A stretch of 64,000 bases of DNA from Hyphochytrium catenoides. Its lineage: Eukaryota; Protista; Hyphochytriomycota. Both the position numbers and the translations under genes were made by a program. The stretch is taken from positions 59,754-123,753 of the forward strand of contig FLMG01001436.1 in assembly GCA_900088475.1 (NCBI GenBank). Reading direction: 5' to 3'. Positions 11,025 to 47,652 of the stretch are shown piece by piece; positions within the stretch are counted from its first letter, which is position 1; every line of letters begins with the position of its first letter. The notes beneath the pieces are model-generated. The model was not told the origin of the DNA and did no database searches. It saw only the letters and a list, made by a program, of their open reading frames with translations.

Positions 11025-13179
11025 ATGACTAGCGTCAGCAAACATGATGATGCCGTTCAGGCTGCTTCTGCGACTCCTATAGCGCTGGACGTCATCCGCG
11101 ATGATCTTGAATGCCCGCTTTGCTTCAAGGTGAGCAGTTCGATGCGTTCTAGTCTCCATGACGCTAACCCTTCGTCTGTAGCTCTTCTACCAACCAATCT
11201 GTACTCCATGCGGTAGGCCAATTGTCGCTCTGTGGCGTTGGGTGACCGTGGATTTAACCCTCGATCTCTCTGCAGGTCACACACTGTGCAGGACATGCAT
11301 AAGAAAGGCGGTACAAGCCAAGCAGCAGTGTCCAATCTGTAAGCTTATATCAACGTTGTTACTTGTTGTTGATCTAATAGCTCACGCTGTTCTGTTAGGT
11401 CGGACTCCTTGCCACTCCGACATCAGCGAGGTCTGGTTATTAATGCTGCTTTGGGCCACCATAGTCTTTTCTGACCTGCCTGCCTTTCTGATCTATAGAA
11501 TCCGCCAAACTATCTCCTGGCAAAGCTCATTGGCCAGCTATTTCCTGATGAACAAAAGGCTAGGATTTTAGAGGCACAAGAAGAACAAAAGGAAGAAAAG
11601 TCCAGACAATACCGCTTGTCCATATTTATTCTCAAGATGCTCGTCTTCCCGGGGGAGACTATCAATCTAAGTAGGACACATTTTGGTTCCCTGCCCCTTC
11701 CACCAGCCCCTATATCTCTCTTTCTGCCAACCCACACCATTGCGTGGAAAGATTTTCTTGAAGTGTGCCATTTGAACACCAGTCTAACGATGGAACTAAC
11801 AGACGTTTTCGAGCCGCGCTACCATGTACTTGTCCAGAGGGCTTTGGAGGGTAATCGTCGCTTTGGCATTCACTTCGATGTAAAGTATCAAAAGCGTCTT
11901 AGCCTTCACTTGTCAGGCATTCTTAGCAATTTCCATTTCATCTTCTCTTTGCCCCCATAGGCACCAGTTGGTTCACTTATGGAGATCACTTCTGTAGCTG
12001 CCCTCCGTGATGGTAGAATCCTTCTTAGTGCTCGTTGCATAGGGTAAGCCTGTTCAACCTCAACATGGTGATCTATTAGCAAAGGATGCTAGTCTATTCC
12101 TAACTCGCATGCTGCTAGACGTTACACCGTCGCAGGTCCCGGTGAGGTAGATGAGAGTGCTTATGGGCTGGTCTACTGTCAGGTCCATAATGCTGAAGAC
12201 GAACCCTTGGACTTTGATAATGGTAAGGTGAGGAATCTTGGCGTCAATGCGCTCCTTCAAGCTCGTGGCGGTCTGTCTTGCTCGCTCCCTACTCTACTGC
12301 GCTAGGACTCTATTATGCGGTAAGCCTTTCCCTCCTCCATCTTTCTTGGTGTACCTCTTTCAACGCCCGATGCCCTTTAACCCATGCTGTAACAAGACCA
12401 TTTCTGCTCTTAACCTTCCCAGATACGGCTGCAGTTGAGCGAAGTCAAGAGCTTATGGAAGCCGCTAGAGTGTTATTTGATCATTTTCGGAGCACATTGA
12501 GCCCTAGCGACCTCCAGGAACTGATCGCACGGTATATGGAAACGTTACATCTGACATTTACTCTTCTCCGCCTGCAGCGTTCTTACTCATCATTCCCACA
12601 CTTTGTATCCTTGCTCTTTGGATATCAGTCACGGGCAGGTCAGTCCATCGGCTTCGGCGTCCTCACTAGGGCTTTGGCTGACAACAATTCTTCGCTTGCC
12701 ACACAGAGACAAGGTAAGCGAATTTTCGTTGTCTGGTGTGTGTAGTCTTCCAGAGTGTAACCTTCTCTGGCCCATGCAAAGCTCCGTCTATTTTCCTCGA
12801 TGAATGCCCTTGATCGACTGGAGTTTGTGGTCAACCACATGCGAACCATAAAAGAGCACACGGACAACTCCACTCAAGATGAAACATCGAGAAGTACGTT
12901 CATGCGCAACGTGTTTGTAAGTTAGCGTACGAGCCTCCTTCGCCATTATGCCACCCATCCTGCTCTCTCACAGAGGTGTCCTTCTCCGTTTCTTCATGTG
13001 CTGGGTTCTGTTTCACAGGAGCTGGCCTTTTAAGCAGTCGAGCAGTATTTGACCTAGCTGGTCCCTCTTCACCTGATATTTCGACGCGTACGGTCATTTT
13101 AGTCCTTCTTCTTGCTGCTGTCTACTACTATCTGTTTAACAACTCCGCTTGGCTTCGAGACATTGCCCGATGGCATTAA
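11025..13179 (+). CDS. LONRF: LON peptidase N-terminal domain and RING finger protein (E3 ligase) with hydrophobic C-terminal tail
   Basis: Spliced C3HC4 RING LECPLCFK|LFYQPICTPCG|HTLCRTC...QCPIC|R. LON substrate-binding motifs IFILKMLVFPGETINLNVFEPRY..V.RALEGNRRFG, GSLMEI...LRDGRILL...GRY, and LDRLEF. Confidence 0.88.
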
Positions 13180-19566: not shown

Positions 19567-21959
19567 ATGTCGTCGGGCAAGAAAAGAACAGAGAAGAGAG
19601 CGTCAAATGTAGCTGCTAGCAAGGAGAACAATGCAGCACAGTCTGCTGCTTCAGCACCAGAGCAAGTCGTAATAGGAATAGATTTCGGTACAACCCATTG
19701 CTCTGTAGGGATTTGGCAGAATGGCCGGGCAGAAGTCATTGCGAACGAACAGGTTTGAGTCCATAATATTTCCATAATAGCTGTCAAAGCTCAGATTTCA
19801 CTCGCCCAGGGCAACCGGTCTACTCCATCGGTTCTCAGCTACAGCGAAACGGAGCTGCTTGTTGGTGAGGCGGCAGAGTCTAAGATGCATAAGAATTCAG
19901 CAAATACAGTCTTTGACATCAAACGACTCATGGGAAAGAAGTTCAGCGATCCTGACATACAAAGGCTAATAAAGAGATGGCCCTTCAAGGTTATAGCTGG
20001 CCCTGACGACACCTGCCGCATAGTGGTTCAGTATCAAGGTTAGCGTCTTCGGATTCTCAAGATATACATTAGCTATGACTGAGCGGGCAATGACATCTAT
20101 AGGCAAAGAGAAAGTGTTATCTCCTGAAGAGGCGGCCGGGACATTACTAAGAAGAATCAAAGCTCAAGCCGAGAGTTACCTAGGAAAGACTGTAACCACA
20201 GCTGTGATTGCCGTCCCAGTTTCATTCACCACGGCGCAACGCCAATCGATGTTGGAGGCAGCAAAAATAGCGAAACTTCATGTAAAGCGGCTTATCAATG
20301 AACCAACCGCTGCAGTTCTGGCGTATGGAATGGACCATCACGGTACAGGCCAAAGGAATGTCCTAGTTTTCGATCTAGGAGGGGGCACGCTGGGAGTAAC
20401 ACTTATCTACGTGGACGAAGGAATGCTGACGGTGGAAGCTACGCACGGGGACAATCACCTGGGAGGAGAAGACTTTGATGACCGCCTGACGGATCACTTC
20501 ATGAAGGAGTTCAATAGAAAGACGAGGATGGATATCTCTGATAATAAGCGCTCACTCATTCGCCTAAGAACAGCCTCTGAGAGAGCCAAGAAAATTCTGT
20601 CTCAGCAGACACAGGCTGCGGTCGATATTGACTCTCTTTATGACGGAGTCGACTTCTCTTCTCGTATATCCAGAGCTCGCTTCGAAGACCTCATATTTGA
20701 TTACATTAGGGAGACGAAGGCTCACGTCGAACAGGTCAGTGAACCCGAGAGTCTGCTTTCTTTCCCTCTCTTCCCACTTAAGCCATAACGTCAAACCCTT
20801 GTAGGTTTTAAAAGAGGCAGAACTAGAGGTGGACGATGTCGATGATGTTTTAGTTGTCGGTGCTGCCAGCAGAGTCCCACGTATCCAGGCAATGCTAGAG
20901 TCAATGTTTGGCGGTGCTTCTAAGGTGCTAACAACGGCGACAACTCTACTTTGTTGTCTTATGGTGTTGAAAGTTTTGCCTGATAGTTCCGTGGCCACGC
21001 TCCTTGTATTAACTCCTTGCATTAACAGATTCAGTCCAAGGTGACTCCCGAGGAGGCCGTCGCACTCGGAGCTACTATTCAAGCGGCAATTTTGGCAGAG
21101 ACTCCTGATTTCGAAGTTCCCGATCTGACTGCGGTTGACGTCGTTCCTCTCAGCCTCGGTCTTGAGACTCAAGGCGGAGTCATGAGCGTTCTCATTGAGC
21201 GCTACGCCTTGCTGCCGGTAAGTATCTAGTTGAAGTGACAATGTTCGTTAAAGAGACCAATTCTATGCTCTTTTGATATAGGCATCCAAGAAAGTTGTCT
21301 GCTCCACTCAGCAGGACGAACAGACCTCAGTTTGCGTCAAAGTTTACGAAGGAGAAAGACAGCTAGTGGCTGACAACACGCTTCTGGGCTATTTCGTCCT
21401 GGATGGCATACCGCCGATGCCTCGTGGCGTACCTGTCATTTCTATAGAGTTTGTCGTTGACGAAAGCGGAGTCCTCCGGGTCAGCGCTGTAGAGAGCAGT
21501 TCAGAAAAGGCAGTTGAGCTAGTGGTCCAGCCGCAAGGTGATAGACTGAGCAAGGAAGGTAGGTCAATCACTGTATTTCCCATGAGGATCAGCATAGGAG
21601 TAACGCCCCTTGCTGGTGTAGATGTGGAGGAGATAGCAAAAGAAGCCGATGAAATGCTAGAGGAGGATGAGGAGAAGGTAGAGGCAATCCAAGCCTGTGT
21701 TGGCCTTCAGAATTTCGTAGACCAGGCATTGCGAGACAGACGGACTTCTGAAGAAAGACAGCAGCTATTAGAAGAGAAGCAGTGGCTGCAAACAGGCAGC
21801 GGACATCCAGCAAGTGTCTACTCCGCCAGACTTGCTCGCATCAAGCAGCTCTGCAAGATGTCAGAGAAGGGGCATTCTTCGACTACCCATGAACCGACCA
21901 CACCCTCTACTTCTGCCCCTCCAGCCGCTGCCGCTCTTGTCGATTTGGATATGGATTAG
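19567..21959 (+). CDS. Divergent Hsp70-family chaperone (7 coding exons)
   Basis: GIDFGTT, IANEQ|GNRSTPS, NTVFDIKRLMG, LINEPTAA, FDLGGGT, HLGGEDFD, PEEAVALGA, DVVPLSLG, VYEGER, GIPPMPRGVP. Six GT-AG introns (e.g. 19753-19809, 20039-20102, 21559-21621). Confidence 0.95.
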
Positions 21960-32900: not shown

Positions 32901-35900
32901 GCTTCCCCGGCGTCAGAGCCGAACTATCATGGAAACAATAGGCCTGAGCAAACGGGAGAAGTAGAGTATTATGGCTTCAGAACATCGGTAACCATGCCTT
33001 GCTCATCCTACCAAATCTGTTGAAGCGTTCTTTCTCTTTCTCTGCTTTAATATCGGGCCCGTTGTCGCAAAGCTTTTACTGGAAGAGGAACAGTGTGCTC
33101 GGTGTCGGACTATCTTTGTGACTAGCGGCAAATCTTCTCTCCTCAGGCCTTTCACTTGCCTTAATGCCCCTCTACATCGACTTGAAGTGACCGCATAGTC
33201 CTTTGTCATTTATACTTCGTTTCTCTTTCTATGAAGCTCTACTGGGTCGGGCTTTCCATAAAGAAGGACTCTACTCCCAGTGCGTTTACCCCTACCACAG
33301 AGATCATCTCTCCCAATCTGCCTATGTCCAACCGCNNNNNNNNNNNNNNNNNNNNNNNNNNNNNNNNNNNNNNNNNNNNNNNNNNNTGTTGTTAGCTGCC
33401 GTCAATCACGTGATGGCCATCGATCCTACGGAACTAGGCTAACACTTTTTTCTCTCCTCCTCGCTCTTCTCTCTCCGTTCAGGGACTACCCCTTCTGTGT
33501 GCCGACAAACAAGGATAATACGACCTTAGAGTTCTATCATTTGCTCCTTCTGGGAAAGAGCAGCAGGAATCAGGCCCAATGCTTCACCTCCTTGGGCCAG
33601 CAGGATCCTGGCCAGTATATGAGACATGGGGACCCTAATGGCCAGCTGGCGGCCTACACAAATGCTATTTATAGGCAAGTGCTATTCGTGTTGGACTCGC
33701 TCTGTCACCTTGGTTCTACAGCTTTTTTGATGGTCTCTTCTCCGTCGAGTCAGAATCTGTGCTTAATTTCTTCTGACACCACGTGATGCTCTTCCCCTAT
33801 GGCGCAGGAGCTGGGCCTACACCCAGGAGAGTGAGATTGAGGAGTTTGTGACGGATGATGGCGTCGCCTACTGGTACAATAGAAGGACAGGTATTTGACA
33901 CGCTGGAGTCTTTGCCTGCGACCTGAGTTCCGTTCTCTGTCGCTCTCCTATTTCCGTATTCTAATCCGCCTTCGTTCATCTATCTTTACCTTGCCAACAC
34001 TAACCGGCTGACTCCTTTGTATTCTAGGTGAGACCTTCTGGGAGCGTCCCATCGACCCTCGAGAATTGGCGAGAGGTGATGATGGGGGGGTGGACGGGAC
34101 ACTACCCACAGGAGAGAAGGAGGCGCCCACTATCTCGTCCGGCGGACAAGCGATCAAGTACAGCCAGCAGCAGGTGAGGACTTCAAAGTCAGAGAAAAGC
34201 CAAAGAAGGGCAGACTAAGGACTAGACCACGTAGATGATAAACAACATGGTAGGGCTAAGCAACAGCCCATCACGAAGCCCAAGTCATAATTGCAAAGTA
34301 GACAAAAGGCCAAAGAGGTTTAGAAGACACGTGACGCAAGAGAAAGGCTAGGGGCTAGTGAATAGAAAGTATTCGGGAAATGAGATCTCTGCCACAAGAG
34401 TGTATTGTGAAGGCTGACCCTCACATGCGTCCCAGATGCGGAAGTACATTCTGAAGACAGTTGAGGAGCCGGAGCAGGAGAAGAAGCGTCTTTCTGACGT
34501 GCGAGCTAGCCTAAAGGATGCCACAATCAAGATGCCTTCTTCCTCTTCGACTCCTCCGACTATCAAAGCTGATAAAGGGAAGACGCTTACCGCCGCTGTT
34601 CCTGAGGTTGTTGGGGACCGGTCCGCGGCCCTTCGAGCAGCATTTTCTCCGACGTCTGGTGCTAAAACTCCTGAGATGGTCCGGGCGAACGCTACAGCTA
34701 ACCCGCAAGGGGGGACAGAGGAAGAGGAGCAGGAAGGATCTCGTCCTTCGTCTCCTTCCCGCCCAACGTCCTCGGCTGCACCGCTTTCCTCCCCTTCCCG
34801 CGCACGAGCTCAAGACGAGACCAAGGGACAGACTCAACCATCTATGTCATTGTCGCAAAACAGCCCTTCTTCGCAACCAAGACAGGCAAAGAAAGAAGAG
34901 AATGGCGACCCTCTCCCTCCTCTGGGAGGTATCAACGCTGATCAACTCATGAAGTCATTATCCTCAGCCCTCCAGTCTGTCTCTACGTCCTTAGGCGACA
35001 AAGCGAAGCCTCAAGATCTCCTCCAGCTAGGCCTAGGCCTCGGTTTAGGCTTAGGACTTCAGCAGGCAGCCTTCTCAGCCCTTGCGGTCGGGGATATGCC
35101 TGTTGATGTGCGGGAAAGGACCAAGACTCCGGGAGTAAAGAACAAGACTGAAGACGATGTTGCTGGTGGAGATCCGAATGAGGGAAAGGAGGCAGTTGAG
35201 GAAACTGCGAAACCGAAGTCAGAATCAATGCAGATCACTCCGACGCCTGATGAAGCACCGCCTCCAGTAGAAGAGCCCGATGTGGCTGGAATCATAGTGG
35301 CACGAGAAGTCAAGCCAGGTGAGAGTCCCTTTTCTCTAATTTGCCTCTTTCTGCGGACGATCGTTCTATTCTTTGCCTCCAGGTACACCAATGCACTAGC
35401 TACCGATAGCCAGGGGCTCTGCAGCTCTCTTTCCTGTTAATCTAGCTTTTTGGCCGTCAATCGCTCAGTTGGCCCGCTTGTTATTTTCTAGAGTCATGTC
35501 TTACCGCCGTCCGTCCTTCCCTCTCTCTTGCGCTGTCTCCTTCTCTCCCGTCTACGTCTACCTGTCTCTCTCTTACATATCCTTCAACCCTTTCCCTGTC
35601 CTTGGTCACCAGGTGTAGACTACCTTACCCATCCAGCAGCCGGGGCTGGTGTAGTTTACCAACCCGAGAAAGGAGGGAATGGTCTTCCATCTCAAGTTCA
35701 AGTGCGGAGGACGGCGGCAGTTCTGCCCAAGAACTTCAAGGAGTCAATCACTTTGCCATCCATCGGGAGGATGTTCGTTGACTATCTACCCAGAACGGCC
35801 AACCTTGTAAGAATTCTTAGCACTTGGCCCTGTTGTCATCCTTAAAGCATCAATACTCTGTTTCATGAGAGGACCTGTCCAGTTTAACCTTAAAGGCTCC

Positions 35901-38756: not shown

Positions 38757-41700
38757 ATGAGGGTTATTGTCGGAGGCAGGCTCCTGTCAGAGCATCATAG
38801 AGCGCAACCAGACGTGGCTCCCATGCCAAGCATGAGGTGAGACAAAGAATAGAATTTCCAGAATCATTGAGAAGTAAAGCTCACGTGTTCACTCACGCTT
38901 CGCTGTGCTCTCTCTCTCTCTTCTCCCTCTTTCTCTGTATTGTATCTATCTGTCTCTCTCGGTCTCTCCTTCCTTCTCTTTCTCCTCCCCTCCTCTTCTC
39001 CCTCTGGCGCTCGTCGTCCGCGTCCCGCAACGGTACCTATCAGTAAGAAGCGGGCATCTAGGTCTCCTGCTGTGAACCTGGCACAGCTTTACCATCAGAG
39101 CCAACGGACAGGAAGAGGCGTGAAGTCAGTACAAACGGTCAGGCCCTTGCTGATCCTAGTGCATCTCGTCTAGATCTCCTTTTGCTGACTGTAAAGCATC
39201 ATCGTGTCACCACTCCTATGTCTTCTTCATCGTCAATTATCATCATCTGTCCTCAGGCTCTCTCTCCGTCGTCCGTAGAATATATCCCGCTGCCAAACGC
39301 AGTGTCTCAGTCTCAGCATTATTCTGCTGTCTCTTCCACATTGCCTTTGGCCCGTATTGACTTCTGTCGCTTCTCGCCCTTGTGCGTTCAGCTTCCAAGA
39401 CTGTTCCGCAAGAGCTTAAGTCAGAAACATGGTGGGCTGGTGGAGCGGGTGGTGAAGCTGGAAAAGGACTTCTGTGAGAACGATATGGTTGAGTTCAAGA
39501 AGGATCTATTGGAAATTGGGGCCATACTCGCAGAGGTAGATCGCGCACTTTTTGAGGCTCACTTGCCAAAGTAGAGAGAGCGTAGAGATTTGACGGCTAG
39601 ATAGAGACTCAATAGATATGGAGAGGTGGCGAAAAGCAGGAGAGCTTTGTGGTATGCTGATGAACTATTCTTCCTACACTTCTAGCCAAGCAATGTTGCC
39701 AAGCATGAGGAGAGGGAGCTCTTCATCGCTATTGGGGGGCCTGAGATCCTCATCCGCATGCTCCTGGCCAAAGGAGCTTCAGAAGATGGTGACGCAAGGA
39801 CCTATATCCCTAGAGGAAAGGGGAAAAAACTAAGCAAGGCAGAGGAAAAGAAGCTCCTAATCGAGACGCTGGTAAGACTAAGCTGCAGGAAGGTGTTAGA
39901 TCAGAGGAAAAGAATGAACAGACAACCGGGAGAGGTTGGACCGCTAGTGAAGTGTCCAAGTCTGGTATCACCCTTCACTGTCTACCGGCTTGCGCTCTCT
40001 GGGCTGACGACTGTTTCTCATCCTGCATCGGTCTCATAGAATATTCTGCGAGAGCTAAGCTTCGCGTTTATGAGTTTGACACAGCGGATATGCGTGCACG
40101 ACGACCTCATCGTTTATCTCTTTTCGCTCTTGGGCGAGGGAAACTACTTTGACTACGCAGGTATGCATTCTGAAGGGAATCGGGGTTTCTTAGAGGGTAC
40201 GGTTGGGAACTGTGGGCGTTCGATCGATCGAGAGTAAGAGAAGCGGAGAGGATAGAGAGAGAAGGAACCGACGAGCATGAAGTTTGAGGAATCACCTAGA
40301 AGATAGGGAAGTTGAGGATCTGCTATTATCATCTGACCCTTTCCCTTCCGCCAGCCGGGTTAGTTGAGGAGATGCTAGCAGTGAGGGAGGAGAGCTTCAA
40401 CCTTGCTCTCGTTCCCCGGTTCCACGAGCTGCTGCGCGGGTTTTCCTCGCGACAATTTTCCTTTTTCTGTCGCATTCTCGCACTCGTAGTGTTTGAACCT
40501 GAAGACCGGCAGTTGATGGAGACCTCGAAAGTGCTGAAATCTGTAGAGCTACTGAAGCTCAGGCGTAACAGGATGATCCGGCCAGAGAATGTCATAGACA
40601 GAAATCATGCGATTGTTTTGGGTAAGAGAAGACTAAGCAGGCATTTCCTTGTGCTTGTTAAAGTGAATCATTTCCAGTGCTATTTTCTCAACTCCCGCGG
40701 CGCAAGGTTCTCCGATTACGGAGCCATGAAAGGTGTATTGCCTGCTAAGCTGATGAAGCTCACTCTATGCTGTTTTCTCCTACGACGCTCTAGCGGTCGT
40801 AGAGCGGTCACCTTCATACTACTGGCCTCCAACTCCTTGTAACTTAACTCCGGATGTGGCCGCCTGTTTATCTTTCTCTCGTCTTCTTTCGTTCCTTGCC
40901 ACTCCTTTAGGTCTCCCGGAGCTTATCCCTCGGCTGGTGAAGCTCATACAAGTCCAAAATGCCACTCCGCCCAGTGAGAACATTCCGGACCAACTACAAG
41001 CGAATCTAGAGATTCTTCTCTTCCTCGGAATGAACGAAGAGAATGATTGGGACTACTTGCCAATAGAGCCGGTAGACAGAACGCAGGAGCGAGAAGCAGA
41101 AGGAGAAAGGTCAGGACAGGCAGCTGGGATGGGTTCAGGTGCCGGAGCAGGATTATGGGCGGGTATTGGTACCACAGCCACTGCTGCTGCGTCAACAGCG
41201 GCAATGTTGGCAGAGTTCATGCTGCCTCCTCTTTCTCCCTGGAACGCTTCCAGAAACCCTCCCAACAACCAGCAGGACGGGAGTCAGGTGGGAGCTGGCG
41301 TGAGAGGAGGCGCAGCCGCCGCTGGACTAGGAGCAGCGGGTCATACGCCAATGAATGCGACACCACGGGGACTACAGAGCGGACCAACCGCTTTGGCAGG
41401 AGGTAAGAAGTGGGCACTCTCTCGGCTATTTTAGGAGGCTACTTCGTCTGCGGGAGAAAGGAATCAACTAGCTTGTGTAGTGGAGCGTTGAAGTACAGAC
41501 AAGGCCAAAAGCAAGGGCAAAGCAAAAGTGGAAGAGGAATGAAGATTGGAGTAGATCAAGATTGAGTAGAGCCTAATCGGCCCCGGGTTGGCCTGAAAGT
41601 GTCTTAGGGGCTCATCGGCCATGCCGCCTGCTGACTGGCTCTTTAGTTGGTCGTGAAACAGGCAATCAAGGCTCTAGAGGGAATAGGTTCTTTCAGATGT

Positions 41701-44382
41701 TCGACATGCACCGCCAGATGAAAGCATTAGCTCTAGCGCCACATCAGGTCAGCTCTATAGTCTGAGCCTTACATTGCCGTATCTCGCTGCTATCAATGGT
41801 TGCGATACTTATGTATGTGGCGCTGTCCCAACTTCCCTCTTTGACTTTCAGGTGGAGGTGCTGTTCGTCCTATGCACACTGCTTGGCGGAAAGAGGAAGG
41901 CAGATGTCCAGGACTCACTTGCTTCTCTCGGGTTTATTGATGTACTTTCGGTCATGTTTGACCGCCTGAACTGGAACCAGCCACCCAGGCCTAATCCAGC
42001 GCATCTTGAGCGCCTTCATGGACCAGGGTGAGGTGTCAATTCTCTCTTTCTTCTTGTTGGTCATGTCTCTCTGCGATCCAGTTCTGCCCTGTTTGGTCAT
42101 GAGACGTCTTCTGCGCATCGGTGGCTCGTCTCCCTGCCGCTTCCCTAGTCTCAGTCTAACGTCTCCGTTCGGTCTATCTGGACTAATCGTTATTGCATTC
42201 GCTCTTGCTTGTTATCCTCAGGTGCGACTGCAACTCCGAGTCCGCTATTCGGGTACAATTCCTTCGTTTGGTGCACAACTATTGCGACAGAGACTGTGAT
42301 CCAGCGAGGGCGCCCTCCGAGATGCTTTCAAAAGAAGAAAGAGCGCTAGCGAACTGTAAGTGTGGGATTGATCTTCTAGTGTCAAAGAATCAGGGACGAG
42401 AAGAGCGGAAACCAAGGTCATATCATGGGACATCTTTCTTCATGATCTACAGGAGATTGTAGCACTATGCAAAGAGAGAGAAGGAGCGAGAGGGAGACAA
42501 GAGAGCGAGAGAAAAGGAGGAGAAGAGAGGAGACAGAGAGAGAGGACGAGAGAAGTCAGTCCCTAGAAAGGATTCTTCCGTCGCCGGGGGCCTCGATCTC
42601 CTCCACCAAACGTAACCCTTCGCGCAATTAATCGCTGCCTTTCCATGATCCGTTGCTGCAGCTGGGGCTGTCACCTACCCTCCAGATCTGCAAGCCCCAA
42701 CTCGAGGGCTGCTGGTCAAGATCATCGCGGTACTCATGAAAGAGCCACATGATTCCACCTACAGGTTCTGGCTGGCATCCTGCATAGAAACCTTCTTGCG
42801 GGGAGCAAGTAAGTAATATTCTTGAGAGGGAGGGTCTAGCCATTTTCCAAGAGACCATTCTGCTCATTGTTTCTCTTTCTAGTGGCATAGACTGTCCGCC
42901 CTCTTGTGTCCTCTAGTGGCATGGTGAATGTTTTGACGGAACGAAACTACTAGTCTGCTCTTGGAACATTCACCTTGGCTGAGTGTACGGTCCTTTGTCC
43001 GTCGCCGTTTGAAGTCAAGTCCTGCTCTATACTATACTGATCATAACGTTTCTTCCGATGTAGGCAAGAATGAGCAGGTATTTGTGGCCCGAACGGGTCT
43101 TCTTCGGCATCTGGTGGACGAGGTGCTGGCAGAGGGCTTCAGATGTGCCGGATGCCTCCAGACGGGCTTTGATCTGCTCGGCGAGCTTATCAAGGGCAAC
43201 AAAGACGTGCTAAGAGAGTTTGGCGCTTTGCTCCAAGGACCAAAGCTCAACAGGCTAATGCGTATCCTTCCCTCACAAATACTGGCTCAAAAACTGTCAT
43301 CTCCGTACAACTCCCATTGACTCCTGGACCAGTCTTTCACCTTTCTCAAAAATCTGAGGACGCGTTTATCATCACTACTTGGCTGAGCGTTTTAATTCCC
43401 ACTCTGGCCTTTGATTTTGACCTTATTGATTATCTGGCGCCATTGCTGTCAGCGTTGTCCTTAACCTCGGTGTAGAGGTGGTGGTGTCACACCTTGTCGA
43501 TTCAAATGTATTTATTAGGGCTATGCTACTCTCCTTGGAGAAGCTTCGGGGTCCAGCCAGCCCCAAGGACTTTGTCCCAGATAGTGTTAGCGAGCCTTTC
43601 AGGTAGGAGTCCTCGCAACAATTAACTTCAATGTTGCGTCCTGATCAAGCTTGATGGTGTCAGCCCTCATAACCCGGACCATCCGATCTAATCTAATGTC
43701 TGACAAATCTGACTTCATGTGCCTCTGTGACGGCCCTTCGTCCGCGGATACGCTAATCCTTGTGTGCTAAGCTCAACTTCACCTCTTGACTGAACCTCCT
43801 CCTAAATTGAACTCCTTCCCAGGTTTGACTTCGAGGATATCTTCGAGTTCTTCACTTACAGCAAGGTTCGCCTTCTGCGGGACCTGATGACGGTCGTCTC
43901 AGTTAGTGAGGTGAACCATGAGAATATTTGCTGCCTCAACACGGCAGTGGTTATCTTTGTCTTTGCGCACAGGCAAGGCATGGTAGCATCGATTGTTCAG
44001 GTACGGACAACCGTCAATGTGCAGTCAGACACAAGGCTATTTCACCAAGGCGTAGTGAATGGAAAGGGCAGTCAAGACTAAGTCTGACACCTGCTAAAAA
44101 TCTAATCATGTCTACTCTCTTTTGAAGGCTCTGAAGCAGTACGAGGCAGAAGGAAATGGCAAAGTAGCGACTAGGAGAAACTTCAGAGAACTTCTCTGGT
44201 TTTGGCGCGAGTACTATTCCCGTGGGAGAGACCGCCTAAGCTTAGAGTGTTCCTCCGGTGTCCGGTTTTCTGAGTGGCAGGCTGCGGTGGAACTGCTTTG
44301 TGCGGATGATGGAAGCCCAACAGCACTGCTCGCTGAGCCCCTGCGATTAGAGTTTGGCAAGCTGTGCAAACAGTCAATGTGA
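38757..44382 (+). CDS. TRPC4AP: TRPC4-associated protein (TRUSS; DDB1-CUL4 substrate receptor) homolog
   Basis: CDCNSESAIRVQFLRLVHNYCD, YRFWLASCIETFLRG, QTGFDLLGELIKGN, LVDSNVFIRAMLLSL, NHENICCLNTAVVIF, NFRELLWFWREYY...LECSSGV.FSEW, collinear with recalled TRPC4AP motifs. The exact start is less certain. Confidence 0.88.
43262..43475 (+). other. U12-type (minor spliceosome) GT-AG intron, phase 1
   Basis: 5' splice site GTATCCTTCC. Branch site TCCTTAAC at 43458-43465, about 11 nt before TAG|, with no polypyrimidine tract. Removal gives GPKLNRLMQVVVSHLVDSN in frame. Confidence 0.88.
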
Positions 44383-44847
44383 TGTAGTCTATTGGCGCTG
44401 ATAGCGACACTATTTGGGGCAGTTTGGAACGAAGACTTAGTGCAAGAATCTGTCAAACGAGCCTATTGAGAATTGGCTAATAATCTTATTACTTTCTGCT
44501 TGAGTGTCATTGTCTCCAAGACAAACTGGCAGGGAAAGCGAGGCCCCGTGGGGAGAGAATGCCACTTTTTGGCTATATCCTCTCCACTTGCTGTACTGTT
44601 GATGCAGTAGCACTGTTTCTATCACTCATCAACACCTCTGTGATTGGAGGCTACCATCCTGACGCAGGCAGCAGCCTGGACTACCAACCAGATGTGGCAA
44701 TGCAATACCTAAGCAACTAAGCAGAATATTGACCATAAGCACCAGTCTGACTCATGAGGCAGAGGAACATAAGGTGGGAGGGTAATGAGGAAGCAGGGCA
44801 ACAACGACCCTATTCAATAAATAATAGACAGTGGAGGTCACCCGCTG

Positions 44848-47652
44848 CTAGATGAGTCCAACTTCAACGGCAAAGACCAGGTCATAGATCATGGCAAAGA
44901 AGAAGAACAGAGCCACCAAGGGCCAGGTGCAAGCGACCCATCCGGGAACTCTCATCCTGATGTTTCGTCCATCGTAGCGTGAGATAGCAAAGATGACGGC
45001 CACAAAGAAGCCTGACTCCATGTTAAGTGCCAGAGATGTGAAAACCTCTAGCACCACAAGGAATCCTGTTGGGTTCATTGATGCAACCACCAGGACCAGC
45101 CCGAAGGACACGAAGTACATCACTCCTTGTAAAACTCTAGGAGAATGGCGAGAAAGGATATTGTAAGGGTGACAGATCCCACGCCAACGAGGATCGACAG
45201 TGAAGGCAAATAACGAGGGTACACAGGATGCTTGACAAGGGAGCAGATCCACGAGGTAACAGCTAGTGGCGCCCGATTTACAGAGGTACAGATGAAGGGG
45301 TCACGAAACGCCAAAATCAATGACTCTACCTGGTGCCTCGTAAACACTGAAAGAAATTGCCAGCCCCTAGACAGATGTTGACAGTCTGACTCCACAACCC
45401 TCCAGGGCCGGCAAGGCTTTTGATGAGACCGTCCACCATATGCTTCAGTCCGGAGCCCATGGTCAGATAGCTCACGGTAATTGATACGGCGATGAAGGTA
45501 TCCACAATCTGAGACATCCACTTGAGGCCCGGAAAGTCTCTATTGATGATGTTTAGGATCGGCACCGTACTGATCTGCCCAGCTTTGTGAGCAGCAAGGA
45601 GGGTTACGGCCTCATTACCAGCTGTAACAGTCACTCATTAGTCTTAACCTGTCACGCTGTAAACCACTCTTGAGAAAGCAGAACATGAGATTCAACGATA
45701 CGGAAAAGTTGGGAAGAAGTAAAACGCAGCTCTGCGATGTGCCATTCAAAAGGACCTGATTCGTAGCTAGAGAGGTCAATACGACGCAGAGAATGGACAG
45801 CAGACAAGAAAGTGAGATACACTACCAGCTTTTGACCCTCCCTCCGCCTCCTGGGGCACAATCTGAAGCACGAAGTAGGCCCAAAATAGATTGAGAATCC
45901 AACACGTAAGAATTCCATAGCACACAGCATTCCGAAAGCCCGCCAGATCAGTGTTCGGTACTGTTCCATATAGCACAGGCATAATATTAACAATTCCGCC
46001 AAGTGCCACCGTTCCCATCAAAAAAGGTTCTCCCGCGTGTCCCCAGGAACTGGAGTGCTCCACATCCAGATGCCCAGCCAAATAGCCTGAGCCGCCCACG
46101 AGGACGAGCAGTAGTGCCACCTTTAGCACCGTGGCATATGAAATGGCGTTGCTGACCAATTCGTAAAGAAAGATCACCACGAGCGTGAAGCTAATGATGA
46201 AAGGAGCTATCATCACAGTATGATCCACGCCTAAGAGATGGCCAAAGGCTGTAGATCCCGCAAGACCGTAGCTGACAAGGACGGACATGAAATGCACAAT
46301 CACAGCTACGTCAAAGACAAACGCAGCCCAAGACTTTAGGTATAAACTGCTGAGACGGTGAAGGCTTGGACCCTCGGCTAGGCCGGAGTTGGCTGAGCTG
46401 CCCTGCCTTGCGACTGCGTGAGGTGTAGAGGAGATAGAACCACAATGTCAGACCACATTAATGCTTGACAAGTCGTCGGGAGACTCGCTAAGTGTTAGCG
46501 TACCGGCAGCGCGTCCAATCTCTTTGCTGCTTGGACTCTTCCTAGCGAAGAAAGCAAGGAACCGAGGCATCCCCCTGACCATCTTGGAGCCATCGGGTGC
46601 GGAATACGGTTCAGCAGACGCCTTCTGTACCTTCCGTGGCTGAACTTCAGGGGACTAAAGACAACAGACATCATTGAGGATCCAAGCTAAGAACCAAAGG
46701 GCTAATGCCGAGACACATACGAGCCCAGGAATGAATGAACGGGGAACAAAAACTCTCAATACTCACTGCGAATTGCAAGGCCTCATAGTCAGAGCTCTCG
46801 TCACCCTTCTGAAGCAACTCCACCATGTAGATGACCGTAAGGATCTGCAAAGAGTAACCGTTGACCCGTAAGTGCCAACTCCCATCTATGCTATTTTCGT
46901 ACTCTTACCTGCATGACGAAAGTCATTGAAAATCCTGCACAAAAGGGCGTAAAACCGCTCTGATAAAGAGACACAGGAAGCCCCAAGATGCCTATGAAGA
47001 AGAAATCTGGTTGGTTAACTTAACCTGACTTCAAGATGCCAAAGATGCAAGAATATGAACAGTCTTGGGGGCACAACGTGGCTACCATGGCGATTCGATA
47101 GAATGGTGGTCAAAGAGGATCATAAGCTAGAGCCTATCAGCTTCCCCAACCATACCTGTTCCTAACGTGGCTGCAATGGAGACAAAGTAGACGTAGAAAA
47201 GAATCCGAAGCTTCGGGCCACAAAGCCCCCGACCAGGGGCACCTGTTCGGTCACCCTGACGTTCACCTAACCATGAAGTGAAGATCAGCATTCTATAGAC
47301 TAGTGTCTAGTGGTACTATACGGCCACTATCTATCTCCTTACTTGAGCTCCGCCTAAGCAGATCTTGGTCCCTTTGGCTCCCCTGAGCCACAATAGGGCT
47401 AAGGGTGCGCTTAGGGGTAGCTCTTTTCTTCACGTCCTGCGTTGGCGACAACGGTATGTCCGCTAAAGCGATCGGAGAGGTATGACTGCTCAGCTTCCCA
47501 TAAGCCGAAAGATGTTCTGCTTGAGGTATAGAAATATCCAGAGTCGATGCATCAACAACATTCTCCCCTGAGCCATCTTCTAGGGAAGAGGTCTCTGTGT
47601 CTTTGCCTAGTCTTTCTCCACCAGCTGCTTTATCGCTAGTAGTACTGATCAT
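44848..47652 (-). CDS. Amino-acid permease (AAAP/HAAAP, Trp/Tyr-permease-like) with long hydrophilic N-terminus
   Basis: YFVSIAATLGT|GILGLPVSLYQSGF TM1 signature, HFMSVLVSYGLAG, PFLMGTVALGG, FIAVSITVSYLTMGSGL, and many hydrophobic segments. Confidence 0.8.

What the first reader, a model, noticed from the sequence alone, without database searches (positions are those of the whole stretch)
43262..43475. Consensus U12-type (minor spliceosome) intron in the TRPC4AP gene
Seen: donor GTATCCTTCC, branch site TCCTTAAC about 11 nt upstream of the AG, no pyrimidine tract, phase 1. None of the other introns I traced has this combination. Splicing restores KLNRLMQVVVSHLVDSN without a gap against the TRPC4AP segment as I recall it. 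Known: RTATCCTT plus TCCTTAAC define U12 introns, which need U11/U12/U4atac/U6atac, and the minor spliceosome has been lost repeatedly in protists. Inference: this organism retains a working minor spliceosome, and the intron may rate-limit a CRL4 receptor.
Basis: partly seen in the sequence, partly recalled or inferred. Interest (0 to 1): 0.8.

Follow-up and report, generated by a model that had tools for sequence, protein, structure and literature searches.

The report
U12-type intron in TRPC4AP gene
A 214-base intron in a TRPC4AP-like gene carries the textbook signals of the rare "minor" (U12) splicing system and looks genuine, but such introns are already known in this organism's nearest relatives, so it is an ordinary new example.

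Summary
Window 43262-43475 (+) is a 214-nt, phase-1 GT-AG intron. Its donor is GTATCCTTCC. TCCTTAAC lies with its branch A 11 nt before the AG. The gene is a TRPC4AP/DUF3689 homologue (five exons hit PF12463 in order).

- Seven other modelled introns of the gene all have G at +5 and no U12 motifs.
- Splicing at 43261|43476 gives an ungapped alignment with orthologues. Retention would run into a stop at 43318.
- One RNA contig from a closely related organism covers the downstream exon and carries the last 9 nt of the upstream exon. This is suggestive, but below the tool's 31-nt bridging rule.
- In a DNA run with two alleles, the middle of the intron varies while the donor and the last 36 nt do not.

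Phytophthora and Saprolegnia have an intron at exactly the same codon and phase, but of U2 type. Bryophytes and a green-alga-like contig have a U2 intron 2 nt downstream. Animal-like contigs have one about 5 codons upstream.

The genome is probably Hyphochytrium catenoides (inferred). Minor introns are published for oomycetes and Blastocystis, so this is a new member of a known kind. The "rate-limits a CRL4 receptor" idea has no support. First-stage notes of this scan flag at least a dozen other U12 candidates elsewhere in this genome.

The parts
43262..43475 (+). U12-type GT-AG intron, 214 nt, phase 1
   Evidence: The boundaries are fixed by reading frame, by ungapped orthologue alignment and by the RNA contig overhang.
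43262..43271 (+). 5' splice site GTATCCTTCC (8/8 match to RTATCCTT; C at +5, where all 7 other introns have G)
   Evidence: It is unchanged in the second allele of DNA run X1, whose first difference is at 43272.
43458..43465 (+). Branch-point motif TCCTTAAC; branch A at 43463/43464, 12/11 nt from the 3' end of the intron
   Evidence: X1 contig record 7 (43440-43975, full depth) differs only at 43649, 43650 and 43859, so this motif is identical there.
43474..43475 (+). 3' splice site AG. The tandem AG at 43476-43477 would break the frame.
   Evidence: The X8 RNA contig aligns from 43476.
43064..43261 (+). Upstream exon (…KNEQVFVARTGLL…GPKLNRLM + first base of the Q codon)
   Evidence: PF12463 positions 145-201, E 2.4e-12. 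The RNA joint 42808/43064 defines its 5' end.
43476..43602 (+). Downstream exon (…VVVSHLVDSNVFIRAMLLSLE…)
   Evidence: PF12463 positions 212-234. X8 RNA contig record 14 covers it, with flanking letters of both neighbouring exons.
41285..44382 (+). Modelled 3' part of the TRPC4AP/DUF3689 gene. Exons: 41285-41402, 41647-41747, 41852-42027, 42222-42355, 42662-42808, 43064-43261, 43476-43602, 43823-44000, 44128-44382 (stop included). The gene starts further upstream near 39.4-39.6 kb, and that part is not exactly modelled.

Best explanation
Window 43262-43475 is a genuine U12-type (minor-class) GT-AG intron of a TRPC4AP/DUF3689 gene. By the established mechanism of this intron class (inferred here, not shown), the /GTATCCTT donor is recognised by U11 and later U6atac. 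The TCCTTAAC box pairs with U12 snRNA and bulges the branch adenosine 11-12 nt before the AG. Removal at 43261|43476 rebuilds a glutamine codon (C|AG) and is obligatory for a full-length protein, because read-through stops at 43318. The intron site is old. Oomycetes carry an intron at the same codon and phase, but of the major (U2) type. The simplest history is an ancestral minor intron kept in this lineage (probably the hyphochytrid Hyphochytrium catenoides) and converted to major type in oomycetes. This follows the accepted minor-to-major direction of conversion.
For: - Motifs and geometry: 8/8 donor, 8/8 branch box, branch A 11 nt from the AG.
- All seven other modelled introns are GTAAG/GTGAG/GTAGG/GTCAG/GTACG with G at +5 and no branch box near the 3' end.
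- The joint chance of both motifs at homology-fixed intron ends is about 3e-8.
- Gene identity: PF12463 hits on five exons in collinear order, and 52% identity over 394 aa to oomycete TRPC4AP.
- The spliced product aligns without a gap for +/-40 residues to nine orthologues. Retention gives a stop 19 codons in.
- RNA: X8 contig record 14 (151 nt) is made of 9 letters GGCTAATGC (= window 43253-43261), then 43476-43602, then 15 letters of the next exon.
- Alleles: there are 6 substitutions and 3 indels at 43272-43355. None were listed in the 10-nt donor, though that list is truncated. The one full-depth contig over 43440-43975 differs only at 43649, 43650 and 43859, so the last 36 nt are unchanged.
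- Same codon and phase in Phytophthora infestans (ATG G|GTACGC…TACAG|AA, 80 nt) and Saprolegnia parasitica (ATG C|GTACGT…TGTAG|AT, 47 nt).
- Literature: minor introns and all four minor snRNAs are reported in Phytophthora, Saprolegnia and Blastocystis, and conversion is taken to run minor to major (PMC10639083).
Against: - The RNA junction rests on a 9-nt overhang in one assembled contig from a different (coded) organism. This is below the tool's own 31-nt criterion for a bridging record.
- No RNA run of the window's own organism was found.
- No orthologue examined has a U12-type intron at this site, so class conservation, the strongest comparative argument, is missing.
- The ancestral-minor history is a parsimony argument from two oomycetes and one assumed direction of conversion.
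Confidence: 0.85

Rival explanations
1. The intron only looks like a U12-type intron and is in fact removed by the major (U2) spliceosome, as a 'minor-like' or hybrid intron.
For: GT-AG termini are compatible with both systems. No minor snRNA was seen in the window. The orthologous intron is U2-type in oomycetes. A graded taxonomy of minor, minor-like and hybrid introns has been proposed (PMC11347168, abstract listed).
Against: Positions +4 to +6 are TCC, whereas all seven neighbouring introns have G at +5, so U1 pairing would be poor. A perfect TCCTTAAC sits 11 nt from the AG, leaving no room for a pyrimidine tract and U2AF. Both motifs stay invariant while the intron interior differs between alleles. 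Other consensus AT-AC introns are noted elsewhere in this genome, and the major spliceosome cannot use those; these notes are unverified.
Confidence: 0.07
2. The intron is U12-type but became so recently in this lineage, by U2-to-U12 conversion or by replacement at an old intron site, rather than being an ancestral minor intron that oomycetes converted.
For: No other lineage examined has a U12 intron here. Oomycetes have a U2 intron at this site, plants and a green-alga-like contig have a U2 intron 2 nt away, and animal-like contigs have one about 5 codons away.
Against: Creating 14 or more specified positions de novo is much less likely than degrading them. The literature treats conversion as almost exclusively minor-to-major (PMC10639083). 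[quoted passage not shown]
Confidence: 0.12
3. The intron is a regulatory bottleneck: slow minor splicing, or regulated retention, limits output of a CUL4-DDB1 substrate receptor.
For: Retention would truncate the protein at 43318. Established knowledge of human TRPC4AP/TRUSS as a DDB1-CUL4 receptor is the only basis for the CRL4 link.
Against: There are no expression or retention data. The single RNA contig is the spliced form. The pan-eukaryotic survey argues that neutral processes explain most minor-intron patterns (PMC10639083). CRL4 receptor function is untested in this organism.
Confidence: 0.05

Closest known systems
Canonical U12-type GT-AG introns (minor class) of animals, plants, Acanthamoeba and Phytophthora
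   Same: /GTATCCTT donor, TCCTTAAC branch box 11-12 nt from the 3' splice site, no room for a pyrimidine tract, non-zero phase, and a host gene that is long and intron-rich.
   Different: Nothing in the signals differs. Dependence on U11/U12/U4atac/U6atac was not shown here.
The orthologous TRPC4AP intron of oomycetes (Phytophthora infestans PITG_09826; Saprolegnia parasitica SPRG_10787)
   Same: Same codon (the one after the conserved Met, six codons before LVDSN) and same phase 1. In Saprolegnia even the exon end ATG C| is the same.
   Different: The oomycete introns are short (80 and 47 nt) and U2-type (GTACGC and GTACGT donors, no TCCTTAAC near the 3' end).
Bryophyte and green-alga TRPC4AP intron (Marchantia L001, Physcomitrium L006, moss-like L059-63, alga-like L049/57)
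   Same: An intron in the same short stretch, adjoining the same aligned codon.
   Different: It lies 2 nt downstream (phase 0, after the E codon) and is U2-type (GTGACC, GTATAT, GTCTGT and GTGCGC donors).
Minor-intron sets of other stramenopiles (Blastocystis about 253, Saprolegnia dozens, Phytophthora few; PMC10639083)
   Same: Same supergroup. They show that the minor spliceosome survives in non-photosynthetic stramenopiles.
   Different: Blastocystis minor introns are mostly AT-AC, about 40 nt long and rich in phase 0. This one is GT-AG, 214 nt and phase 1. In the library searched, no paper pairs Hyphochytrium with 'U12' or 'minor spliceosome'.

Membership tests
U12-type (minor-class) spliceosomal intron | 5' splice site /RTATCCTT | tested here: met
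   GTATCCTT at 43262-43269, an 8/8 match. The other 7 introns match 3-4 of 8.
U12-type (minor-class) spliceosomal intron | Branch-point box TCCTTRAY close to the 3' splice site (about 10-15 nt) | tested here: met
   TCCTTAAC at 43458-43465, with the branch A 11-12 nt from the last intron base.
U12-type (minor-class) spliceosomal intron | GT-AG or AT-AC termini | tested here: met
   GT at 43262-63 and AG at 43474-75.
U12-type (minor-class) spliceosomal intron | No polypyrimidine tract between branch site and 3' splice site | tested here: inconclusive
   Only CTCGGTGT (9 nt with the AG) follows the box. Pyrimidine fraction at -20..-4 is 0.65, the same as three U2-type neighbours.
U12-type (minor-class) spliceosomal intron | Excised in RNA at exactly these boundaries | tested here: inconclusive
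   One RNA contig of a related organism joins 43253-43261 to 43476 onwards, but with only 9 letters on one side. Frame and orthologue alignment require the same join.
U12-type (minor-class) spliceosomal intron | Splicing depends on U11, U12, U4atac and U6atac snRNPs, and the genome encodes them | not testable with these tools
Unverified scan notes report an RNPC3 gene and many AT-AC introns.
U12-type (minor-class) spliceosomal intron | Conserved as a minor intron at the same position in distant orthologues (supportive, not obligatory) | tested here: not met
   The same site is U2-type in two oomycetes. Plants and algae have a U2 intron offset by 2 nt. Animal-like contigs have one about 5 codons upstream. 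64 of 80 metagenome loci have no intron there.
TRPC4AP / DUF3689 (PF12463) protein family | Collinear match to the PF12463 profile | tested here: met
   Exon pieces hit profile positions 1-38, 39-75, 145-201, 212-234 and 255-311 (E down to 9.6e-19). Identity to oomycete TRPC4AP is 52% over 394 aa.
TRPC4AP / DUF3689 (PF12463) protein family | Acts as a DDB1-CUL4 substrate receptor | not tested
   This is known only for the human protein, from general knowledge. Nothing here bears on it.

The most novel reading that the evidence does not exclude
This would be the first documented minor-spliceosome intron of a hyphochytrid (probably Hyphochytrium catenoides). Together with the U2-type intron at the identical codon and phase in Phytophthora and Saprolegnia, it would be a clean, datable case of minor-to-major intron conversion on the oomycete stem. 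With the other candidates noted in this genome, hyphochytrids would then be a minor-intron-rich reference point for reconstructing minor-intron loss in stramenopiles.
Probability: 0.55. Interest if true: 0.3.

Novelty: new member of a known kind. Interest (0 to 1): 0.2.

Why it matters
It adds one well-supported minor intron, and by inference a working minor spliceosome, to a little-studied stramenopile lineage. In the library I could search, no paper pairs Hyphochytrium with 'U12' or 'minor spliceosome'. It also gives a matched pair for studying intron-class conversion: U12-type here, U2-type at the same codon in oomycetes. It has a practical side too. Gene predictors that know only U2 signals can mis-model such genes, so annotations of this genome should be checked at U12 sites. 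It does not change what is known about the distribution or mechanism of minor splicing.

Tried and rejected
- Rfam scan of the window for U11/U12/U4atac/U6atac or any RNA family: nothing. This says little for a 64-kb piece.
- RNA runs of the same organism: none listed. One search attempt failed twice as busy before answering.
- Search for the window's own full-length protein and for close relatives: the best representative is only 53-68% identical in the best exon, and no row was masked as the window's own.
- Orthologue loci that gave no intron information:
  - TARA contigs L003-L005 are intronless.
  - L002 and L007 are transcripts.
  - Priapulus and Chara were not on record, and one NCBI locus came without DNA. 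No named animal gene structure could therefore be compared. Only animal-like metagenome contigs L086-L090 were available.
- First metagenome scan with the single exon found nothing. The alignment-based scan gave 80 loci.
- Literature: no paper holds TRPC4AP together with 'minor intron', and none of the three papers holding both TRPC4AP and 'U12' looked relevant from title and abstract. Supplements of PMC10639083 and PMC11347168 hold no gene list.
- Physarum-style expansion was rejected. Only one clear U12 intron is in the window, other RTATCCTT sites lack coding support, and run X1 shows two diverged alleles at about equal depth.
- ATATCCTT at 45161(-) was rejected as a donor. It lies inside a long hydrophobic ORF that reads through.
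- A Markov-chain simulation of chance motif pairs timed out and was replaced by an analytic estimate.
- The automatic exon-boundary refiner failed for most junctions. The junctions that matter were read by eye.

Full report
**Observation**

- GTATCCTTCC starts at 43262.
- TCCTTAAC occupies 43458-43465.
- The intron ends with AG at 43474-43475, so it is 214 nt long.
- The upstream exon ends ...AAC AGG CTA ATG C and the downstream exon begins AG GTG GTG GTG TCA CAC CTT GTC GAT TCA AAT.

The intron is therefore phase 1 and the join reads KLNRLM-Q-VVVSHLVDSN. The next AG (43476-77) would break the frame. Read-through of the intron meets a stop at 43318.

**Chance**

On their own the two motifs are not unusual in 64 kb. 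RTATCCTT occurs 9 times against 3.3 expected, and TCCTTAAC 2 times against 2.2 expected. A donor followed within 3 kb by a branch box and an AG/AC is expected about 0.11 times per window.

What matters is the placement. Both motifs sit exactly at the two ends of an intron whose ends are fixed independently by reading frame and protein homology. The probability of that is about 3e-8 per intron, or 3e-6 for 100 introns.

**The gene**

Exon-sized ORFs on the + strand between about 39.4 and 44.4 kb hit Pfam PF12463 (DUF3689, the TRPC4AP family) in collinear order. The profile positions are 1-38, 39-75, 145-201, 212-234 and 255-311, with the best E-value 9.6e-19.

I modelled the 3' part from frames, splice signals and three RNA joints (41402/41647, 41747/41852 and 42808/43064, after the tool's cut offsets). 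The exons are 41285-41402, 41647-41747, 41852-42027, 42222-42355, 42662-42808, 43064-43261, 43476-43602, 43823-44000 and 44128-44382. The 5' part was not modelled exactly, because one phase conflict near 39570/39686 is unresolved.

The 404-aa C-terminal product is 52% identical over 394 aa to oomycete TRPC4AP proteins and about 44% to bryophyte ones. Around the junction it aligns without any gap for +/-40 residues to nine orthologues.

**Intron class**

| Feature | Intron 43262-43475 | The seven other modelled introns |
|---|---|---|
| Donor | GTATCCTTCCCT | GTAAGA, GTCAGC, GTGAGG, GTAAGT, GTAAGT, GTAGGA, GTACGG |
| Position +5 | C | G in all seven |
| Match to GTATCCTT | 8 of 8 | 3-4 of 8 |
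| TCCTTAAC near the 3' end | 8 of 8, branch A 11 nt from the AG | none |

Only 9 nt follow the branch box, so there is no room for a pyrimidine tract.

**RNA and allele evidence**

No RNA run of the window's own organism was listed. One RNA run of a differently labelled organism (X8) has exon contigs that are mostly 90-99% identical (one 172-nt piece has 15 differences), and it was laid on 39400-44500.

X8's 151-nt contig, record 14, aligns to 43476-43604. It carries 9 unaligned letters GGCTAATGC before 43476 and 13 letters TTGACTTCGAGGG behind 43604.
- The 9 letters are exactly window 43253-43261, the end of the upstream exon. They do not match the intron's last 9 nt.
- The 13 letters match the start of the next exon (43825 onwards).

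So this contig is the spliced form across both flanking introns.

DNA run X1 (organism A) shows two alleles at about half depth each.
- In the intron they differ at 43272, 43285, 43289, 43299, 43301 and 43305, and by indels at 43343-43355.
- No difference was listed in the 10-nt donor. The list of differences is truncated (67 not shown).
- One full-depth contig spans 43440-43975 and differs from the window only at 43649, 43650 and 43859. The branch box and acceptor are therefore the same.

This pattern is modest evidence that selection keeps the splicing signals unchanged.

**Orthologous sites**

| Source | Intron at or near this site | Type |
|---|---|---|
| Phytophthora infestans (L008) | ...TTC ATG G\|GTACGC...TACAG\|AA GTG GTC; 80 nt; phase 1 in the codon after the conserved Met | U2 |
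| Saprolegnia parasitica (L010) | ...TTT ATG C\|GTACGT...TGTAG\|AT GTG GTG; 47 nt; same codon and phase | U2 |
| Marchantia (L001), Physcomitrium (L006) | 2 nt downstream; phase 0, after the aligned E codon | U2 |
| Moss-like metagenome contigs L059-63 | same as bryophytes | U2 |
| GC-rich, probably green-algal contigs L049/57 | same as bryophytes | U2 |
| Brown alga Scytosiphon (L009) | none here | - |
| Animal-like contigs L086-L090 | about five codons upstream | U2 |
| Other metagenome loci | 64 of 80 are uninterrupted across the site | - |

The site is therefore shared exactly with oomycetes, but nowhere else did I find a U12-type intron at it. The published view is that conversion runs almost exclusively from minor to major type (PMC10639083). 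The simplest history is thus an ancestral minor intron kept here and converted on the oomycete stem. The reverse direction cannot be excluded with this sampling.

**Which organism**

The runs are coded, so this is an inference. The observations below fit Hyphochytrium catenoides as described in PMC5795050.

| Observation here | H. catenoides (PMC5795050) |
|---|---|
| Two alleles at about equal depth in X1; total depth about 365 | Diploid, SNP frequency about 0.0275; coverage 312-610x |
| About 101 Mb of uncollapsed contigs in X1 | 107-Mb uncollapsed Ray assembly |
| DNA runs dated 2011 and 2017 | Illumina GAIIx run plus a later HiSeq run |
| The eight modelled introns are 104-306 nt | Mean intron 208 bp, 3.64 introns per gene |

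Further points fit as well. The protein is closest to oomycetes and shares the intron site with them. A 100%-identical 151-nt contig lies in a rhizosphere metagenome. An unverified first-stage note reports a tandem pair of kalium-channelrhodopsin-like genes elsewhere in the same genome, and that protein family was described from H. catenoides (abstract of 10.1101/2022.09.26.509509). I put this identification at roughly 80%. The main conclusion does not depend on it.

**Novelty**

Minor introns and all four minor snRNAs are published for Phytophthora, Saprolegnia and Blastocystis, and for many other protists, fungi and green algae (PMC10639083). No paper in the searchable library contains Hyphochytrium together with 'U12' or 'minor spliceosome', and none links TRPC4AP with a minor intron. 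This is therefore a new member of a known kind.

First-stage notes of this scan list at least a dozen further U12 candidates in the same genome (ICMT, VAC14, MICU, DCTN3, TMTC, SMG8, TRF4 and LRR genes). They also list an RNPC3 gene and a possible variant donor class. I could not check any of them. They agree with a functioning minor system but are not independent evidence.

**What is not supported**

Nothing here bears on the idea that the intron limits output of a CRL4 receptor. The only RNA seen is spliced, the CRL4 role is known only for the human protein, and the large survey favours neutral explanations for most minor-intron patterns.

**Other RTATCCTT sites in the window**

- 12605-12823(+) has GTATCCTT, a CCTTGAT box 10 nt from an AG, and open frames on both sides in phase 0. 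There is no homology support.
- 35577-35856(+) and 61544-60482(-) pair ATATCCTT with a branch-like box and AC, but lack any coding context.
- 45161(-) lies inside a long hydrophobic ORF and is not a donor.

**Verdict**

This is a real, textbook U12-type intron in a TRPC4AP homologue (confidence 0.85). It is of modest interest (0.2). Its value lies in extending minor splicing to a hyphochytrid and in the matched U12/U2 pair with oomycetes.

Noticed in passing
window 12605-12823 (+): A possible second U12-type GT-AG intron: GTATCCTTGC donor, CCTTGAT box with its A 10 nt before an AG, 219 nt, phase 0, with ORFs open on both sides (126 aa upstream, 33 aa downstream). No Pfam support for the flanking pieces.
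   Followed up: partly
window 35577-35856 (+) and 61544-60482 (-): ATATCCTT paired with a branch-like box (TCCTTAAAG, CCTTAAC) at U12-like distance from an AC. I found no convincing coding context on either side, so these may be chance.
   Followed up: partly
window 39400-44500 (run X1): DNA contigs fall into two alleles at about half depth each (about 180 of about 365). There are many substitutions and small indels in introns, for example 43272-43355 and 42858-42902. This indicates a strongly heterozygous diploid.
   Followed up: partly
window 42478-42648: A GA/AG-rich low-complexity stretch inside an intron of the TRPC4AP gene. Word depth rises to about 1,700 (against about 360 around it), and many contigs end there with loose ends. 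It is a simple repeat found at many places in the genome.
   Followed up: no
window 41647-41747 (+): A 101-nt exon invisible to ORF listing, revealed only by the RNA joints 41400/41645 and 41743/41848 of run X8. Its flanking introns are GTAAGA...AG and GTCAGC...AG.
   Followed up: yes
window 20075-21959 (+): A divergent Hsp70-family gene. PF00012 positions 104-316 hit with E 6e-73 and positions 444-590 with E 5e-16, in two large exons.
   Followed up: no
window 39570-39686 (+): At the 5' part of the TRPC4AP gene, the obvious donor (AA|GTAGAG, phase 2) and acceptor (…TCTAG|CCA, phase 0) do not agree in phase. A small exon or another splice site must lie between them, and the start codon was not fixed.
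   Followed up: no
L008 2451-2530; L010 2573-2619: The intron-poor oomycete TRPC4AP genes (at least 2 introns in P. infestans and 4 in S. parasitica, from tblastn pieces) have kept an intron at exactly the site where this window has its U12 intron.
   Followed up: yes
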